A stretch of 64,000 bases of DNA. It comes from Guillardia theta CCMP2712. Taxonomy: Eukaryota; Protista; Cryptophyta. Position 1 is the first letter of the stretch; every line of letters begins with the position of its first letter. This document shows, one piece after another, positions 1 through 11,350 of this stretch. A program made the position numbers and the translations under genes. The notes beneath the pieces were generated by a model. The model saw only the letters and a program-made list of their open reading frames with translations, ran no database searches and was not told where the DNA came from. The stretch lies in assembly GCF_000315625.1 (NCBI RefSeq), contig NW_005434671.1:638188-702187 (forward strand), given 5' to 3'.

Positions 1-130
1 CCTCCTCCTCCTCCTCCTCCTCCTCCCTCCTCCCTCCTCCCTCCCCTCCCCTCCCCTCCTCCTCCTCCCTCCTCCCTCCTCCCTCCTCCCTCCTCCCTCC
101 TCCCTCCTCCCTCCTCCCTCCTCCCTCCTC
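1..130. repeat. (CCT/CCCT)n pyrimidine microsatellite
   Basis: Pure C/T tract built from cct and ccct units at the window start. Confidence 0.95.
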
Positions 131-1612: not shown

Positions 1613-2719
1613 TTATAGCTTCACCACCGACAAGAATCGCTTATGCTTTTCTTCCAGCCTCAGCTTCATGGTGGAGGCGCTCCTGTCTGGTGGAGGCTGG
1701 AGGCGCTCCTGTCTGGTGCGAGGCGCATGACGCCCTTGCGGGCGCAAGCACTTCTCGAGCCAGAGGACAGCTCCTCCTCGGACTTTGTCGAGTCGCCCGA
1801 GGAGTCTTCGCCGGAGGTCTCCGACTCCGATGGGGGAAACATCCAGAGTGGAGCCGACGCGCCCACTGTGACGTCGGATGCCTTCGGAGAGCTTGACACC
1901 ACTGGGGTGCTTGCTGCTGGTCCGAGCTCGCCTGCCCCCGATGCCGCACAGCCCCGGTCCCTGGGCATTGATGCGGCGTCGCTGCCGTCACGGGTGGTGT
2001 TGGTCTCGGCTACCGCTGACTCGGAGGCTAGTGAGGAGGACTGGATGCGTCACCTCGAGCGGGTGTCCAGCCTCCCTCTGTCCGCTGCCCCCGGCGGACC
2101 CCCGGGCAGCGCCGGCTCCTTGTCGGCGGCTGCCCTTTCTCCGTCCGCGGCCGCCAGCTTTGCGGTGGCGGCCGCGGACGTCTCGACTGACAGTGGTCAG
2201 TCGGATGCCTCCGGGTATCGCGTCTAAGGGAGTTTCATCTCGGACGTCCCCATGCTCCTGCTGCTTGTTACCCCTCCTACCGACTGTTGCTTGACCCTCC
2301 CTGCTTGTCTGCGCGGCTTCGCGCGTGGGCTGGCGGCGCGTGGGCTGGCGGTGTCGCTTTGACCTCTCTGTCCACGTGCCGGGTCTGCTGACAGTTGCCA
2401 GCAGTGCTGGTTACTTTTGGTCTTGTTTTGTTGTGTGTGTTTGTGCAGCTTCTCGCTGTGCGCTGTGTGCATGCAGGTTTAGCTTGTTCCTGCTTTGTTC
2501 TGCTTGAGGCACTTTTTACCTTCTGCGAGTGAAACTTCCTCCTTCTGCGAGTAAACATTCTCTACATTGGGCACAGGAGCATGGTACGGCTCGAGGTGAC
2601 GCATCCAGTCCTCCTTACTAGCCTCCTCCGGTTACAAATCTTCGTCGTCCGGCTGCTATGCCTGATGACGCAGGACGCCCCCCGGCATATGTCACAGAGT
2701 ACACATACCTGGACTTGGT

Positions 2720-3813
2720 TTGCGCGCTCTCGTCGACTTGTCTCATGAGCACTTCATTCCTCCGCCTGCGCAGCGCAATGTGACTCCTCTTGTCATGCGC
2801 GTCTTCCCTCGCCATGTGCATGCTCGCGCTGCGCTGACCGATCAGCAGCGTGATATCCTCACCTTGCACAGCCGCAGGACACACTCGCTCAAGTCGCAGG
2901 ATAGGGTCTTGCAGTCTACCATCTTCGCTCATTTTCCTGAGCGAGACCTGAGCCACTCTCCGATGCGAGTCTCGAGCTACTACCCCCTCAAGGCCTTCCC
3001 GCACCGCTATGCTCAGATGCTCGACTGCTATCTCCATGGCATTCCGATCTGCCAGTGTCCGACGGAATGTGATGGATGTCAGCGCGAGCTCGATCCCTCC
3101 GTTGCTGCACATCATCTCCAGACCTGCAAACGCCGATCCTCCAAGCTTCCCACGGCGCATGACAACTGGGCCTTACTCGTACGATTCGGTCGATGCTGAA
3201 CGAAGCTGGTCTTCAAAGCGTCATCGATACAGTGGGGGATCCTCGTTCTCGACGGCAGGTACCCTCCCATCCTCATGGCCGCAAGATGAAGGGCGATATC
3301 CACATCCCTGGAATCCGCGATCGAGGGTCCGAGCAGTACGAGGGCTTGATGGCGGACGTGACGTTGGTCCACCCTTACATTGGTAGCTCTGCCGACCTGA
3401 CCAAGTGGGGGGAGGTCAACCTCGACGCCCTCCATGTTGCAGCGTCTGAGAAGATTCGCAAACATCGCGCTGCATATGCCATGACTACTCCTCCTCGAGC
3501 GTTCATCCCTCTTGCCATCTCGACGGACGGTACCCTGCATCCTGACACCCTCCGCTTCATCTGGTATCTCGCGGACATCATTGCTCAGCGCTCAATGCCT
3601 CTTGAGGATGCGGCGTTTGGTCGGCACTTCGTGCCTGATGACGGACCTGCTGCTGAGGTCTTGGCTCGCAAACGCGCCGCCACCTATCAGCGCCTCACCA
3701 TGCAGCTGACGCTGGAGGCGCTCTTGTCTGGTGCGAGGCGCATGACGCCCTTGCGGGCGCAAGCACGATGGGGGACACCCTTCGAGTGGCGCCGACGATC
3801 GGCGCGGCTGTGA
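2720..3813 (+). pseudogene. Non-LTR retrotransposon ORF fragment: CCHC zinc knuckle + restriction-like PD-(D/E)xK endonuclease; RT domain absent
   Basis: CDGC...HHLQTCKR...HD is followed, after a frameshift near 3170, by KGDIHIP...ADVTLVHP...AASEKIRKH...FIPLAISTDG...FIWYLA. This is the motif order of the RLE domain in CRE-clade elements. Confidence 0.85.
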
Positions 3814-4550
3814 CGTCGGGTGCCTCCGGAGAGCTCGACACCACTGGGGTATAGGATTTACTGGGGTGCTTGCTGCTGGTCCGAGCTCGCCTGCTTCCTC
3901 CCCGGCATCGGTCGGGTCACGCCGGTCCTTGGGCATTGCCGCGGCGTCGCCGCCGTCAAGGGCGGCTACCACTGACTCGGCTACCGCTGACTCGGAGGCT
4001 AGCGAGGAGGACTACCTCGAGCGGTACCGTGTTCCTGTGTCACCAGCCTCCCTCGGCTGCCTCCGGGTATCGCGTCTAAGGGATTTTATTCCTCCTGCAT
4101 GCTCCTGCTGCTTGTTGCTTGATTGCTTGACCCTTAGGCTGCTTGTCTGCGCGGCTTCGCGCTTGGGCTGGCGATGCCGCGTCTGGGTGCCAGCAGTGCT
4201 GGTTCTTTTCGGGCTTGTGTTTTGTGTGTGTTTGTGCAGCTTCTCGCTGTGGACTGTGTGCCTGCCGGTTCAGCTTGTTCCTGCTTTGTTTTGCTTGAGG
4301 CACTTTTTACCTTCTGCCAGTAAATCATATACCTCGCGTCTAGATAGATGGTACGCGGAGCTGGCGAGGCGTCTCCGTCCCTCACTGTGACGTCGGGTGC
4401 CTTCGGAGAGCTCGACACCACTGGGGTGCTTGCTGCTGGTCCGAGCTCGCCTGCTTCCTCCCCGGCATCGGTCGGGTCACGCCGGTCCTTGGGAATTGCC
4501 GCGGCGTCGCCGCCGTCACGGGCGGCTACCACTGACTTGGTTACCGCTGA

Positions 4551-5514
4551 CCCGAGCAGTACGAGGGCTTGATGGCGGACGTGACGTTGGTCCACCCTTA
4601 CATTGGTAGCTCTGCCGACCTGACCAAGTGGGGGGAGGTCAACCTCGACGCCCTCCATGTTGCAGCGTCTGAGAAGATTCGCAAACATCGCGCTGCATAT
4701 GCTATGACTACTCCTCCTCGAGCGTTCATCCCTCTTGCCATCTCGACGGACGGTACCCTGCATCCTGACACCCTCCGCTTCATCTGGTATTTGGCGGACA
4801 TCATTGCTCAGCGCTCGATGCCTCTTGAGGATGCGGCGTTTGGTCGGCACTTCGTGCCTGATGACGGCCCTGCTGCTGAGGTCTTGGCTCGCAAACGCGC
4901 CGCCACCTATCAGCGCCTCACCATGCAGCTGACGCTGGAGGCGCTCTTGTCTGGTGCGAGGCGCATGACGCCCTTGCGGGCGCAAGCACTCCTCGAGCCA
5001 GAGGACAGCTCCTCCTCGGACTTTGTCGAGTCGCCCGAGGAGTCTTCGCCGGAGGTCTCCGACTCCGATGGGGGAAACCCTTCGAGTGGCCCCGACGATG
5101 GGCGCGGAGCTGGCGACTCGGAGGCGTCTCCGTCCCTCACTGTGACGTCGGGTGCCTCCGGAGAGCTCGACACCACTGGGGTGCTTGCTGCTGGTCCGAG
5201 CTCGCCTGCTTCCTCCCCGGCATCGGTCGGGTCACGCCGGTCCTTGGGAATTGCCGCGGCGTCGCCGCCGTCACGGGCGGCTACCGCTGACTCGGCTACC
5301 GCTGACTCGGAGGTATAGCGAGGAGGACTACCTCGAGCGGTACCGTGTTCATGTGTCCAGCCTCCCTCCGTCCGCTGCCCCAGGCGGACCCCCGGGCAAC
5401 GCCGGCTCCTTGTCGGCGGCTGCCCTTTCTCCGTCCGCGGCCGCCCGCTTTGTGGCGGCAGCGGACGTCTCGACTGACAGTGGTCAGTCGGCTGCCTCCG
5501 GGTATCGCGTCTAA
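4551..5514 (+). pseudogene. Second copy of the RLE C-terminus plus low-complexity tail
   Basis: 4551-4988 is near-identical to 3328-3766. The frame runs on into an Ser/Ala/Asp-rich tail, which is broken at ~5314 by a small TATAG-creating indel and would otherwise end at GYRV* (5514). Confidence 0.85.
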
Positions 5515-7934
5515 GGGATTTTCTTCCTCCTGCATGCTCCTGCTGCTTGTTGCTTGATTGCCTGACCCTTAGGCTGCTTGTCTGCGCGGCTTCGCGCTTG
5601 GGCTGGCGATGCCGCGTCTGGGTGCAAGCAGTGCTGGTTCTTTTCGGGCTTGTGTTTTGTGTGTGTTTGTGCAGCTTCTCGCTGTGGACTGTGTGCCTGC
5701 CGTTTCAGCTTGTTCCTGCTTTGTTTTGCTTGAGGCACTTTTTACCTTCTGCCAGTAAATCCTATACTCCTCGCTAGCCTCCGAGTCAGCGGTAGCCGAG
5801 TCAGCGGTACCGTGTTCATGTGTCCAGCCTCCCTCCGTCCGCTGCCCCAGGCGGACACCCGGGCAGCGCCGGCTCCTTGTCGGCGGCTGCCCTTTCTCCG
5901 TCCGCGGCCGCCCGCTTTGTGGCGTGGTCAGTCGGCTGCCTCCGGGTATCGCGTCTAAGGGATTTTCTTCCTCCTGCATGCTCCTGCTGCTTGTTGCTTG
6001 ATTGCTTGACCCTTAGGCTGCTTGTCTGCGCGGCTTCGCGCTTGGGCTGGCGCTGCCGCGTCTGGGTGCCAGCAGTGCTGGTTCTTTTCGGGCTTGTGTT
6101 TTGTGTGTGTTTGTGCAGCTTCTCGCTGTGGACTGTGTACCTGCCGGTTCAGCTTGTTCCTGCTTTGTTTTGCTTGAGGCACTTTTTACCTTCTGCCAGT
6201 AAATCCTATACGTACACATAGGATTTACTGGCAGAAGGTAAAAAGTGCCTCAAGCAAAATAAAGCAGGTGGTAATGGATTTGTCTTGGCTCACAAACTCG
6301 CCGCCACCGATCAGCGCCTCACTATGCAGCAGCAATGGATTTACTGGCAGAAGGGAAAAAGTGCCTCAAGCAAAAAAAAGCAGGAACAAGCTAAACCTGC
6401 AGCTGACGCTGGAGGCGCTCTTGTCTGGTGCGAGGCGCATGACGCCCTTGCGGGCGCAAGCACTTCTCGAGCCAGAGGACAGCTCCTCCTCGGACTTTGT
6501 CGAGTCGCCCGAGGAGGAGTCTTCGCCGGAGGTCCGAGTCCGACTCCGATGGGGGAAACTTCCAGAGTGGCGCCGACGACCGGCGCGGAGCTGGCGAAGC
6601 GTCTCCGTCCCTCACTGTGACGTCGGGTGCCTCCGGAGAGCTTGACACCACTGGGGTGCTTGCTGCTGGTCCGAGCTCGCCTGCTTCCTCCCCGAAATCC
6701 ATTCCTTCCGGCATCAGTCGGGTCACGCCGGTCCTTGGGCATTGATGCGGCGTCGCCGCCGTCAAGGGCGGCTCCCGCTGACTCGACTGACAGTCATATA
6801 GGATTTACTGGCAGAGACAGTGGTCAGTCGGCTGCCTCCGGGTATCGCGTCTAAGGGATTTTCTTCCTCCTGCATGCTCCTGCTGCTTGTTGCTTGATTG
6901 CTTGACCCTTAGGCTGCTTGTCTGCGCGGCTTCGCGCTTGGGCTGGCGATGCCGCGTCTGGGTGCCAGCAGTGCTGGTTCTTTTCGGGCTTGTGTTTTGT
7001 GTGTGTGTGTGTGCAGCTTCTCGCTGTGGACTGTGTGCCTGCCGGTTCAGCTTGTTCCTGCTTTGTTTTGCTACGTTATAGGATTGAGGCACTTTTTACC
7101 TTCTGCCAGTAAATCCTATGTCTCTCTTAGGCCCTGTATAGGATTTACTGGCAGAAGGTAAAAAGTTCCTCAAGCAAAACAAAGCAGGAACAAGCTGAAC
7201 TGGCAGGCACTGCTTTGTTTTGCTTGAGGCACTTTTTACCTTCTGCCAGTAAATCCTATACTCCTCGCTAGCCTCCGAGTCAGCGGTAGCCGAGTCAGCG
7301 GTAGCCGCCCGTGACGGCGGCGACGCCGCAGCAATGCCCAAGGACCGGCGTTTGCTTGAGGCTACTTTTACCTTCTGCCAGTAAATCCATTGTGGCGGCG
7401 TGACCCGACTGATGCCGGGGAGGAAGCAGGCGAGCTCGGACCAGCAGCAAGCACCCCAGTGGTGTCAAGCTCTCCGGAGGCACCCGACGTCACAGTGAGG
7501 GACGGAGACGCCTCGCCAGCTCCGCGCCGGTCGTCGGCGCCACTCTGGAAGTTTCCCCCATCGGAGTCGGAGACCTCCGGCGAAGACTCCTCGGAGATAT
7601 AGGATTTACTGGCAGAAGGTAAAAAGTGCCTCAAGCAAAACAAAGCAAGAAGGAAACATAGGATTTACTGGCAGAAGGTAAAAAGTGCCTCAAGCAAAAC
7701 AAAGCAGGAACAAGCTGAACCGGAGCTTCTGGAGATGGCTCGCCCTCACCAGCGTCTTGAACATGAACAGCAACAAAAGCGGTGTACTTGCTCCCCCCCG
7801 ACCTTGCAATGATGGATCGTATGCCAGCCGTGCCAGTCAGATAGCGCCGAGTTAACAAAACTCTCCTGCCGGTTCAGCTTGTTCCTGCTTTGTTTTGCTT
7901 GAGGCACTTTTTACCTTCTGCGAGTAAATCCTAT

Positions 7935-8256
7935 AAAGCTGTAAACCAAGACGACTTACTTGTTTCAAGGCGGCCATGTAGCGTGTGGGACGAAGTGGGG
8001 GCTTTCCTAGCCGTCTTGCTAAGGTCCTCTCATGTCTGGATGCTTGGGTTCACATCCTAGCATACGGAAATAGTGGATACAGTCTATCTCTCATGTGCTC
8101 CTCAATTCTGGTTTCGTGTGCATTAAACTCGGTCTGCAAAAATTGTCTTTCAACAACCAAGGTCGATGTGATGTCTGCGTGACTTTGGCAAAGTACAAGC
8201 CTAACAAACTTGTGCTCCGTCATGCAAACTATGACCCAGTGAGTCACTAGTTTACA
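7935..8256 (-). mobile_element. Possible left end of the Fanzor-carrying element with a short degraded ORF
   Basis: AT-richer than the DNA that follows. TAGTTTACA (8248-8256) is the inverted copy of TGTAAACTA (561-569). A minus-strand ATG at 8223 opens MTEHKFVRLVL... No clear TSD is visible. Confidence 0.35.
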
Positions 8257-9015: not shown

Positions 9016-11350
9016 ATGTTGGCGAAGAACAAGTTTGTGGTTCTGAGCGGCTTGATCCTCCTCTACCATGAGGTGAAGCTCCTGCCTGCTACCTGCTGCC
9101 TGCTGCCTGCAGTCCCTCGCTCATTCCGTCTGCTTGCTTCAGGTCTTGGTGTTCCTCTCGGTCCCTTACAGGTGCAGCTGGCCAACAACCACTGTGAGTG
9201 TCTGTGACACCAACGCGCGACTGATGTGCATCGCAAGTGTCCGGACGCCTTTAGAGCAGCTGTGGTTGGAGATCCTCAGCTCACTGATCGCTCCTCTTAC
9301 TGGTTTGCTCCCTCGGGCATGAGTGAGAAGCATGCTTGCTGCTGCCTCGGCGTGACTGGTGTCAGTGCTATGGCTCATCGAACAGCTGAGCGACGTCTTC
9401 ATGAAGAAGTCGTTCCGTCAAGTGTTGGCCATGCGGTGCTCACTCTCAACGAGAGGACACATGCTTGCTCCTCTGATGTCAGAGGGTGATTGCAGACCGC
9501 ATGCTGTCTTGTTTGTCGGCGATCTCATGGATGGAACTGTGAGATTGACGTGTGTTCAAGACGTTTCTAGCATTGTGTCTGACTTCTTCACTAGCGACGA
9601 GGAGTACGAGCAAGAGCTCGCTCGCTTTCGCCATGTCTTCTCAATGCCGCCACATGTGCAACGGTTGTTTGTCGCTGGTCACACCGCTCACTGTGAGTGC
9701 TCGGCTGATTTGCGGGACAGGAAACCACGACGTGGGGATCCGATCTCCTGCTCTATGTCCCGTGTGCAGGAGGCGATTCGAGAAGCACTTTGCGATGAGG
9801 AAGTACGCGAAGGAGATGTCGGACTTGATGGTACTCGCTGAAGGAGGGAGCCTCGCAAGCTGACGAGGTCGTGAGGTGGTTGGCATGGACTCCATCCAAG
9901 TGTTTCACAACACCTCGATACAAGGTGACATGACTCCCGTCCCCTCCTCTCTCACCTCCTCCTCTCTCACCTCCTCCTCTCTCACCTCCTCCTCTCCTGC
10001 CCCCTCCTCTCTCACCTCCTCCTCTCTCACCTCCTCCTCTCCTGCCCCCTCCTCTCTCACCTCCTCCTCTCTCACCTCCTCTTCTCCTGCCCCCTCCTCT
10101 CTCACCTCCTCCTCTCTCACCTCCTCCTCTCTCACCTCCTCCTCTCTCACCTCCTTCTCTCCCTCTCATTCTCACTCGTGTGCAGGCTTTCCTTCCGCCC
10201 CTTGCCAGCGCAAGCTTCTCCTCTCTCACGTGCCTCTGTGGCGAGAGAGCGACTCGCCATGCGGAGCGACGCGAGGAAGCGCGAGGGGGATCGACTACGG
10301 GCAAGGGTTCAACTATGAGAACATGCTCCCCCGGTGAAAGCGAAAGAACTCGAGGGGAGGTGGCGGGGGTGTCAGGCGGGGAATGAAAGGAGGCGAGCTC
10401 AGAAAGAACGAGGAACATCGGAGGGAGGAGGGAGGAGGAGACAGGGGAGGAGAAGGGAGGGGGAGGAGGAGAGGTCATGTTTCACTCTCCTTCAGGTCCG
10501 TCACTGAGAACCTTCTGAGGGACGTGGCGCCCGACCTCATCTTGAGCGGGGACGATCACGACCATTGCAAGTGACACTCACGCGCTTGAGAGAGACGAGA
10601 AGACTGACAGTCAGTGTAGACATGTTCACCTATACCCCAGTGCTGAGGGCCATAAGGAAGCAACAGAGATCACCGTTGGCACCTTTAGCTGGTCTGTTGA
10701 TGACAGGGCATCGGGTCAGTAATGATGAACAGGCTGCAAGGGAACCCTCGTCCTTCAGTTGTCCTACTCTCTATCTCTACCTGTTTGCTTCGGAAGCAAA
10801 AATCTCACTGCTTGCGGAGACTATCCAACGCGACTGCAACGCACGTAGACGAAGCGCGTCAGGGGGAAGTCTCAAAAGAAGCTTGGTTTGACTACAGGGT
10901 TTGCCCGTACTGCTTGTGTTTGTGCTCAGGCCATTTCTTTACTCTTTTGCTCAGTCTGCCCAGGCAGCTTGGAGCCGTCTTCTTCTACTTGTCTTGGCTA
11001 GCCAGCTCCTTACTTGTCAGCTTCGCTTTCCATCTGCTTTGTTTGGAAAGTCAGTCGTTTGACATAAGTCAAGAGAGTCTGAGAGATCTTGTTGTCGTTG
11101 ACTGATGGGACAGAAAAATTTGAGGAGAAGCTAAAGAAGAAGGAGCGACACTGGCGTGTTCTCCTCAAGGTGTTTTCAGCGAGCAATATGATGAGGTTGC
11201 TCATGAACTTCAGGTGCGGAGAGCTTGTGCTTTGACATGGAAGGATGGAATACGATCATCTAGTATCATTCTCCTCATGTACGGGTGTATTCATCTTCTT
11301 GCTCAGCTGTCTTGATCTTGTCTCCTTTATTCATCGGAAAGATTGTTCGC
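9016..11350 (+). CDS. MPPE1: Metallophosphoesterase, MPPE1/PGAP5/Cdc1-like (multi-exon; 3' end approximate)
   Basis: N-terminal TM segment. Calcineurin-like motifs are spread over exons: VVGDPQLTD, LFVGDLMDG, GNHDVG, LLSHVPL, QGFNYENML and ILSGDDHDHC. The C-terminus has hydrophobic segments. Confidence 0.85.
9943..10155. repeat. 15/18-bp pyrimidine minisatellite (CTCACCTCCTCCTCT)n, probably intronic
   Basis: About 13 tandem units are directly visible inside the MPPE1-like gene. Confidence 0.9.

What the first reader, a model, noticed from the sequence alone, without database searches (positions are those of the whole stretch)
3843..7095. Ultra-short, antisense micro-insertions of the retroelement's own 3' terminus with target duplications
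Seen by comparing sister copies: ACTGGGGT-[ATAGGATTT]-ACTGGGGT at 3843-3867; GACAGT-[CATATAGGATTTACTGGCAGA]-GACAGT at 6789-6821; GTTTTGCT-[ACGTTATAGGAT]-TGAGGC at ~7073-7084; and GGAGGCTAG changed to GGAGGTATAG at ~5314. Each insert is the reverse complement of the extreme end ...CCAGTAAATCCTATA. Inference: these are aborted target-primed reverse-transcription events of ~5-20 nt, resolved by microhomology and aimed at the element's own sequence. They would record repeated self-targeting by an RLE retrotransposon.
Basis: partly seen in the sequence, partly recalled or inferred. Interest (0 to 1): 0.75.

Follow-up and report, generated by a model that had tools for sequence, protein, structure and literature searches.

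The report
Tiny aborted copies of a retrotransposon tail
In the alga Guillardia theta, an R2-like jumping gene that lands only in one pile of its own copies per chromosome often writes just 8 to 50 bases of its tail before stopping, so reverse transcription aborted at the target site can be read directly from the genome.

Summary
Three of the four claimed micro-insertions are real. They lie at 3850-3864, 6797-6815 and 7077-7084. Each is absent from sister copies in the window, and two have 59 and 111 empty sites in other nests. All three junctions are unique in the genome. The fourth (C to TA at 5314) is a private variant that cannot be attributed.

The pattern holds genome-wide. In 266 kb from 32 nest segments I found 33 simple insertions of the element's 3' end, 8 to 291 nt long, 23 of them 50 nt or shorter. 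All have the same 1-6 nt target duplication, a purine-rich filler at the 3' junction, and excess 5' microhomology. Of 35 insertions of 10-49 nt in copies, at least 21 begin at the terminus.

The best reading is the shortest class of 5' truncations made by target-primed reverse transcription. The element is a non-LTR retrotransposon with an R2-type endonuclease, supported by a sequence profile and by predicted fold.

Two corrections. Antisense orientation is not general (micro events 9 same, 8 opposite). Targeting is regional, one nest per large contig, with only a weak GGR nick motif.

This scan already described the same behaviour on other DNA of this genome (s1-434704, s1-431653). I found no published description.

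The parts
1693..7935 (.). Nest of about 20 fragments of one non-LTR retrotransposon family in both orientations. It is the only such nest on contig C3.
   Evidence: BLAST tiling against two real reference fragments. Terminal 20-mer places on C3 all fall at 643.9-645.9 kb of the contig, which is window 5.7-7.7 kb.
3843..3867 (-). Event 1. A 14-15 nt copy of the element's 3' end (3850-3864), read antisense on the + strand. It is flanked by ACTGGGGT twice. Five of those duplicated bases (ACTGG) can equally be assigned to the insert (microhomology).
   Evidence: 59 empty sites. Junction unique in the genome. Target position about 4386 of the element.
6789..6821 (-). Event 2. A 6-nt target duplication GACAGT, a 2-nt filler CA, and a 19-nt copy of the 3' end (6797-6815).
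   Evidence: Junction unique in the genome.
7073..7085 (-). Event 3. A 4-nt filler ACGT plus an 8-9 nt copy of the 3' end (7077-7084/5). There is no target duplication.
   Evidence: 111 empty sites. Junction unique in the genome.
5314..5315 (+). Event 4 of the finding. C is replaced by TA in one copy. It is not attributable to the terminus.
   Evidence: Alignment. The 20-mer spanning it occurs once, against about 60 copies for neighbouring positions.
6218..6268 (-). 51-nt terminal fragment placed tail-to-tail, 7 nt after the 3' end of the sense copy that ends at 6210.
6337..6397 (-). 61-nt terminal fragment with a variant terminus (AATGGATTT...). It sits in a sense copy with a target duplication of about 6 nt.
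7137..7260 (.). A 74-nt antisense and a 50-nt sense terminal fragment joined head-to-head. This fits twin priming or cDNA snap-back.
7598..7723 (-). Two further short terminal fragments, 54 nt (7598-7651) and 66 nt (7658-7723).
7865..7935 (+). 71-nt terminal fragment at the right edge of the nest.
2649..4331 (+). Host copy of event 1. It covers element positions about 3099-4973 with internal deletions. It includes the CCHC knuckle (about 3050-3130) and the frameshifted endonuclease coding region (about 3190-3700).
4552..5766 (+). 1.2-kb 3' fragment that carries the event 4 variant. It was used as the query and ends in the canonical terminus at 5766.
6398..7119 (+). Host copy of events 2 and 3. 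It covers element positions about 4133-4972 with an internal deletion.
7261..7594 (-). Antisense copy fragment. Its site at about element position 4532 (after GCGAGGAG) received the insertion that ends at 7260. The same site was hit at 5766/5767 and, in another nest, by an 8-nt insert.

Best explanation
The inserts are extremely 5'-truncated insertions made by target-primed reverse transcription of one non-LTR retrotransposon of Guillardia theta.

The element is about 5 kb. It encodes a reverse transcriptase followed by a CCHC knuckle and an R2-type restriction-like endonuclease. It has no poly(A) tail, and its sense strand ends in ...AAATCCTATA.

Proposed steps:
1. The endonuclease nicks DNA inside the family's nest at a weak G-rich site (GGR, then the cut).
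2. The freed 3' OH is extended, usually after 1-6 extra purine-rich bases, by copying the RNA from its exact 3' end.
3. Synthesis often stops after 8 to about 100 nt.
4. The second strand is cut a few bases away, typically 3-6 nt.
5. The short cDNA is joined to the other target end, in about a third of cases through 2-5 nt of microhomology.

Shown here: the anatomy of the junctions, the length series, the endonuclease homology and the restriction to nests. Inferred: the order of events, and that stopping is early abortion of reverse transcription.
For: 1. Anchoring. Of 35 gapped insertions of 10-49 nt in copies, 17 start at the canonical terminus and 4 at a variant terminus. 7 are tandem duplications and 7 are unknown.
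2. Continuity. Terminal fragment lengths run from 8 to 4328 nt without a gap.
3. Same cut geometry. The median target duplication is 3.5 nt (range 1-6) for 23 inserts of 50 nt or less, and 4 nt for 10 inserts of 55-291 nt. Inserts of 1057-2533 nt show about 6-7 nt in three cases and a 3-nt deletion in one.
4. Known junction signature. 3' fillers occur in 65 of 82 junctions, with G 89, A 75, T 45, C 28. 5' microhomology of 2 nt or more occurs in 10 of 33 against 6% expected (p = 2e-5). Drosophila R1 and R2 5' junctions show microhomologies and non-templated bases too, and non-templated bases occur at some R1 3' junctions (PMC2718515).
5. Re-initiation. In at least 4 independent places an 8-nt start is followed by a fresh start of the terminus.
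6. Enzyme. RT motifs with a borderline Pfam RVT_1 match. A profile of the C-terminal domain hits the R2 protein endonuclease region in PDB at E = 0.0015. The AlphaFold model (pLDDT 79) has R2 proteins as its six best matches, best E = 8.6e-6.
7. The window's three events are private to this locus.
Against: - All evidence is static sequence from one Sanger-era assembly. No reads, RNA 3' ends or biochemistry were available.
- 8 of 33 simple events show small target deletions with fillers on both sides instead of duplications. End joining would also give these.
- Every visible copy has YADN instead of YADD in RT motif C. The family's own enzyme may therefore be impaired, and the polymerase that made the inserts is not identified.
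- The interiors of intact copies are withheld, so the 5' end and the full coding capacity were not seen.
- The sample was chosen around long 3' fragments, so length proportions are approximate.
Confidence: 0.8

Rival explanations
1. DNA-templated patching. Breaks in the nest are repaired by polymerase-theta end joining or replication template switching, which copies short stretches from neighbouring DNA copies of the element.
For: Nests are full of termini in both orientations. Microhomology occurs at junctions. 8 of 33 events have small deletions with fillers on both sides.
Against: DNA-templated copying should start anywhere in neighbouring sequence. Instead at least 21 of 35 insertions of 10-49 nt begin at the exact RNA 3' end, and none of the rest could be traced to an internal part of the element other than tandem duplication of adjacent sequence. 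The 3-6 nt duplications match those of kilobase insertions.
Confidence: 0.08
2. Secondary deletion. Ordinary long insertions later lost most of their length.
For: In event 1 the ACTGG shared by the insert and the duplicated target would allow a microhomology deletion that gives the same product.
Against: 18 of 23 micro-inserts retain an intact target duplication of 1-6 nt and an uninterrupted target beyond it. This requires deletions that end exactly at the old 5' junction each time. 16 of 33 have no junction microhomology. The 8-nt starts followed by re-initiation are not explained.
Confidence: 0.05
3. Footprints of a DNA transposon whose terminal inverted repeat is the TATAGGATTT motif.
For: Tail-to-tail pairs of termini (6196-6231, 7106-7151) look like inverted repeats. 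Event 1 has an 8-bp duplication like hAT elements.
Against: The motif is the 3' end of a unit that encodes a reverse transcriptase and an endonuclease. Fragments form a one-sided truncation series from 8 nt to over 4 kb. No inverted copy of the terminus was seen upstream of the longest visible copy. Duplications are 1-6 nt and variable.
Confidence: 0.01
4. Assembly or sequencing artefacts in a repeat-rich region.
For: The assembly is fragmented (669 contigs) and nests contain gaps. No reads could be inspected here.
Against: Misassembly joins reads at shared repeats. It does not create 9-27 nt inserts with target duplications and fillers. The same anatomy recurs at 33 sites on 19 contigs.
Confidence: 0.03

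Closest known systems
[quoted passage not shown]
   Same: The reverse transcriptase is followed by a CCHC knuckle and a PD-(D/E)XK endonuclease. This is supported by profile homology to the R2 protein and by R2 proteins as the best structural matches. Other shared features are no poly(A) tail, priming without annealing and with extra bases at the 3' junction, and 5' truncation with microhomology or extra bases (PMC2718515).
   Different: There is no single target site. Insertions are scattered over the whole element sequence, with only a weak GGR preference. No N-terminal zinc-finger motif was found; the N-terminus is poly-Ala and poly-Gln. No ribozyme was detected. RT motif C reads YADN. The share of ultra-short insertions appears unusually high.
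Zepp and ZeppL LINE clusters of green algae (Coccomyxa, Chlorella, Chlamydomonas)
   Same: [quoted passage not shown] Here 23 of the 24 largest contigs show a nest. Contig C1 also has one outlying match 25 kb from its nest.
   Different: From my own knowledge, Zepp elements are L1-like LINEs with poly(A) tails. This one is an R2-type element in a cryptophyte. Association with centromeric histone is untested here.
5'-truncated LINE-1 insertions with junction microhomology
   Same: Incomplete first-strand synthesis is followed by microhomology-assisted joining (PMC2912911, listed, title and abstract only).
   Different: From my own knowledge, L1 truncations average hundreds of bases and prime on poly(A). 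Here about half of the simple insertions are under 50 nt and the mode is 8 nt.

Membership tests
Non-LTR (LINE) retrotransposon integrating by target-primed reverse transcription | Encodes a reverse transcriptase | tested here: met
   Pfam RVT_1 at E = 8.8e-7, 29.3 bits against a cut-off of 29.6, so borderline. RT motifs can be read in the translation. Motif C is YADN rather than YADD.
Non-LTR (LINE) retrotransposon integrating by target-primed reverse transcription | Copies share a fixed 3' end and are variably 5'-truncated | tested here: met
   142 terminus-bearing fragments of 23-4328 nt, plus micro-inserts of 8-25 nt.
Non-LTR (LINE) retrotransposon integrating by target-primed reverse transcription | Insertions are flanked by short target duplications or deletions, with no LTRs or inverted repeats | tested here: met
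   25 of 33 simple insertions have 1-6 nt duplications and 8 have 1-6 nt deletions. No inverted terminus was seen upstream of the longest visible copy.
Restriction-like-endonuclease clade (R2-like) | CCHC knuckle plus PD-(D/E)XK nuclease, C-terminal to the reverse transcriptase | tested here: met
   A profile of 44 homologues hits R2 protein residues 913-1042 at E = 0.0015, aligning CCHC, RHN, PD, DVT and K..Y. The model has pLDDT 79, and the top six PDB matches are R2 proteins, best E = 8.6e-6. D129 and K163 are nearly invariant.
Restriction-like-endonuclease clade (R2-like) | Sequence-specific single target site (28S rDNA, spliced-leader genes and the like) | tested here: not met
   75 distinct nick sites are spread over the element. 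Only G enrichment at positions -3 to -1 (47-56%) is seen.
Restriction-like-endonuclease clade (R2-like) | N-terminal zinc-finger or Myb DNA-binding domain, and for R2 a 5' HDV-like ribozyme | tested here: inconclusive
   No CCHH pattern in the visible N-terminal 470 residues. No ribozyme in Rfam scans. The true 5' end was not defined, because the interiors of intact copies are withheld.
Zepp-type centromere-nesting LINE | One self-nested cluster per chromosome | tested here: met
   Terminal 20-mer places on contigs C1-C24 fall in one cluster each, except C16, which has none. C1 also has one outlying match 25 kb from its cluster. Exact 10-mer matches outside clusters are near the control rate.
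Zepp-type centromere-nesting LINE | L1-type element with a poly(A) tail | tested here: not met
   No poly(A). The endonuclease is R2-type.
Zepp-type centromere-nesting LINE | Association with centromeric histone or kinetochore | not testable with these tools
   Needs ChIP data.

The most novel reading that the evidence does not exclude
The family's reverse transcriptase, which reads YADN instead of YADD in every visible copy, is intrinsically poorly processive. The single nest on each chromosome, a candidate cryptophyte centromere, would then be built and kept uniform largely by a nick-and-scribble activity that mostly writes 8-100 nt tags of the element's tail. That would be a centromere-directed, naturally abortive form of target-primed reverse transcription.
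Probability: 0.15. Interest if true: 0.75.

Novelty: new variant of a known kind. Interest (0 to 1): 0.55.

Why it matters
Very short products of target-primed reverse transcription normally cannot be recognised in genomes. Here self-nesting supplies dozens of empty-site paralogues for each event, so single aborted events of 8-20 nt can be read with their cut stagger, untemplated bases and joining microhomology.

This gives a natural record of the early, failure-prone phase of integration by an R2-type enzyme. That class of enzyme is now being developed for gene insertion.

The finding also adds detail to a family whose one-nest-per-chromosome pattern makes it the best marker so far for cryptophyte centromeres. 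I found no paper on either point.

Tried and rejected
I did not try another route, so the statistics rest on 266 kb.
- Interiors of intact copies read N and were left alone. The full-length structure and the 5' end are therefore undefined.
- Pfam, single-sequence PDB searches and the ESM Atlas gave nothing for the C-terminal domain.
- AlphaFold with a shallow alignment of paralogues failed (pLDDT 32). Only the deep search gave usable homologues.
- The word search found relatives only in G. theta.
- Rfam found no ribozyme, only low-complexity noise.
- The last 150 nt of the RNA are not structured (z = +1.6), so a stem-loop roadblock is rejected.
- Antisense bias is rejected.
- An R-loop-guided self-homing idea, which predicted an antisense bias, was dropped for the same reason.
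- Event 4 is rejected as unattributable.
- Survival curves from marginal k-mer counts are confounded by nest fragmentation and were used only as totals.
- A literature search for YADN reverse transcriptases found nothing relevant.
- Inside scripts I used two real fragments placed end to end as a coordinate ruler.
Full report
**Where this is.** The window is contig C3, 638188-702187, of an 87-Mb, 669-contig eukaryotic assembly. Paralogous proteins at 75-98% identity are annotated GUITHDRAFT, Guillardia theta CCMP2712. Window positions 1693-7935 form a nest of about 20 fragments of one repeat family in both orientations. The family's sense strand ends in ...AAATCCTATA with no poly(A).

**Check of the observation.**
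- Event 1 adds 17 nt. ACTGGGGT appears twice around ATAGGATTT.
- Event 2 adds 27 nt. GACAGT appears twice around a CA filler and a 19-nt antisense terminus.
- Event 3 adds 12 nt, an ACGT filler plus TATAGGAT, with no duplication.

A flank search across 266 kb of other nests found 59 and 111 uninterrupted empty sites for events 1 and 3. Event 2 got none there, because a deletion lies just upstream in its copy; its empty site is seen in two sister copies in the window. Each junction sequence occurs once in the genome. The terminal 15-mer, with up to 2 mismatches, occurs 12 times in the window against 0.01 expected. Event 4 is a private C-to-TA change. A 2-nt change cannot be assigned to any source.

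**What the element is.** The visible parts give a unit of about 5 kb.
- The N-terminus is rich in poly-Ala and poly-Gln.
- The reverse transcriptase has a borderline Pfam RVT_1 match (29.3 bits against a 29.6 cut-off). Motifs A to E are readable in the translation.
- A CxC...H...C knuckle is followed by GD, DVTLV and K..KH..Y motifs.

Single-sequence searches of Pfam and PDB found nothing for the C-terminal domain. A full HMMER search gave 97 hits, including remote homologues from marine metagenomes and from the cryptophyte Rhodomonas salina. A profile of 44 of them matches residues 913-1042 of a solved R2 retrotransposon protein at E = 0.0015, motif by motif. An AlphaFold model built on that alignment (pLDDT 79) has R2 proteins as its six best PDB matches, with a best E of 8.6e-6. 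The next matches are other PD-(D/E)XK nucleases.

**The phenomenon genome-wide.** The exact terminal 10-mer occurs 498 times against 35 for the reversed control. The 20-mer, with up to 2 mismatches, occurs 662 times against 1. On contigs C1 to C24 these places form one cluster each. C16 has none, and C1 also has one outlying match 25 kb from its cluster.

In the 266 kb I could fetch, the stretch matching the antisense terminus has lengths that run continuously from 8 nt upward. BLAST tiling adds 142 terminal fragments of 23 to 4328 nt.

Thirty-three insertions lie in an otherwise uninterrupted copy, so both junctions can be read.
- Twenty-three are 50 nt or shorter.
- The target duplication has a median of 3.5 nt (range 1-6) in the short class and 4 nt in the 55-291 nt class.
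- Eight events have deletions of 1-6 nt instead.
- Insertions of 1057-2533 nt show about 6-7 nt in three cases and a 3-nt deletion in one.

Between target and terminus there are 1-10 extra bases in 65 of 82 distinct junctions. These are rich in purines: G 89, A 75, T 45, C 28. At the other junction, microhomology of 2 nt or more occurs in 10 of 33 events against 6% expected (p = 2e-5). Drosophila R1 and R2 show microhomologies and non-templated bases at their 5' junctions, and non-templated bases at some R1 3' junctions (PMC2718515).

**Census without a prior motif.** I took every gapped insertion of 10-49 nt in copies relative to a real reference fragment. Of 35, 17 begin at the canonical terminus, 4 at a variant terminus, 7 are tandem duplications and 7 are unknown. 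At least three of the unknowns look like further terminus variants. None of those I could classify derives from an internal part of the element other than tandem duplication of adjacent sequence. This anchoring at the RNA 3' end separates reverse transcription from DNA-templated patching.

**Early stopping.** Eight nucleotides is the most frequent verified length (four events). At five places in the genome, at least four of them independent, an 8-nt start is followed directly by a fresh start of the terminus. This looks like abortion followed by re-priming. The last 150 nt of the RNA are not predicted to be structured, so a hairpin block is unlikely.

**Corrections to the reading.**
- Orientation relative to the target is 9 same to 8 opposite for micro-inserts. 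It is 53 same to 29 opposite for all distinct 3' junctions (p = 0.01).
- The nick site shows only G enrichment at positions -3 to -1 (56, 53 and 47%) and almost no C at -1. The antisense strand of the element is the G-richer one, which may explain the mild same-orientation excess.
- Target positions follow the abundance of each part of the element in nests.
- The element therefore reaches its own copies because it is confined to nests, not because it reads a specific sequence in them.
- One site, after GCGAGGAG, was hit three times, twice in this window.

**Rivals.**
- Secondary deletion would have to stop at the old 5' junction each time in order to leave the duplications intact.
- Footprints of a DNA transposon are excluded by the one-sided truncation series, the coding content, and the lack of an inverted terminus upstream of the longest visible copy.
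- Misassembly does not create inserts of 9-27 nt with duplications at 33 sites on 19 contigs. Reads were not available, however.

**An oddity.** All 14 visible genomic copies and 8 predicted proteins read YADN, not YADD, in RT motif C. I found no paper on such a motif. Whether this enzyme is weakly processive, or the family is copied by another enzyme, is open.

**Limits.**
- The interiors of intact copies are withheld.
- The sample was centred on long fragments, so the share of short insertions is probably underestimated.
- Within scripts, two real fragments served as a coordinate ruler.

**Prior notes and literature.** This scan had already described the family as a self-nesting R2-like element that writes tiny copies of its 3' end, and its nests as candidate centromeres, on other DNA of this genome. 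My analysis reaches the same reading independently. It adds the junction statistics, the unbiased census, the nick motif, the orientation test and the endonuclease homology. Searches found no paper on G. theta centromeres or on this family. The closest precedent for one nest per chromosome is Zepp in green algae (PMC3446292).

Noticed in passing
L047:5446-8199 and 13 other loci; proteins P0005, P0010, P0018-P0020, P0024, P0026, P0027: RT motif C reads YADN instead of YADD in all 14 visible genomic copies and 8 predicted proteins of the family. The second catalytic aspartate is missing, yet the family has hundreds of near-identical insertions.
   Followed up: partly
window 7137-7260: A 74-nt antisense and a 50-nt sense copy of the terminus are joined head-to-head, with the termini facing outwards. 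This is as expected from twin priming or from the cDNA snapping back on itself.
   Followed up: no
window 6337-6397 and about 7343-7392; C108, C53, C315 and C7: At least two variant termini exist besides ...CCTATA...AAATCCATT(ACC) and ...AAATCCACTAT. They also occur as micro-inserts. The motif-based count therefore underestimates the events, and several subfamilies have been active.
   Followed up: partly
window 5766/5767 and 7260/7261; C32 nest: The same target position (after GCGAGGAG, element position about 4532) received three insertions of different length, so it may be a local hot spot.
   Followed up: partly
window 1693-2533: A copy of the 3' 830 nt at only 77% identity, with a different tail. 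It is either an older layer of the nest or a divergent subfamily.
   Followed up: no
C76:405807-407956 (L030): Three termini spaced exactly 1066 nt apart, each with the reiterated 8-nt start. Two share the same flank, which suggests a local tandem duplication inside a nest.
   Followed up: no
protein P0094 (metagenome, 1577 aa): A remote homologue of the endonuclease domain sits at the C-terminus of a protein whose N-terminus is a ubiquitin C-terminal hydrolase (Pfam UCH, E = 4e-29). This recalls protease-bearing NeSL-type elements.
   Followed up: no
I did not re-examine it.
   Followed up: no
window 1-130 and 9930-10160: Long CCT/CCCT-type and CTCCTCTCTCAC-type simple repeats flank the nest region.
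   Followed up: no
C75:300004-310999, minus-strand offset 1591: A 15-nt terminus copy with an AGAGG-type filler sits inside a (TG)n microsatellite. Micro-inserts are therefore not strictly limited to element sequence within nests.
   Followed up: no
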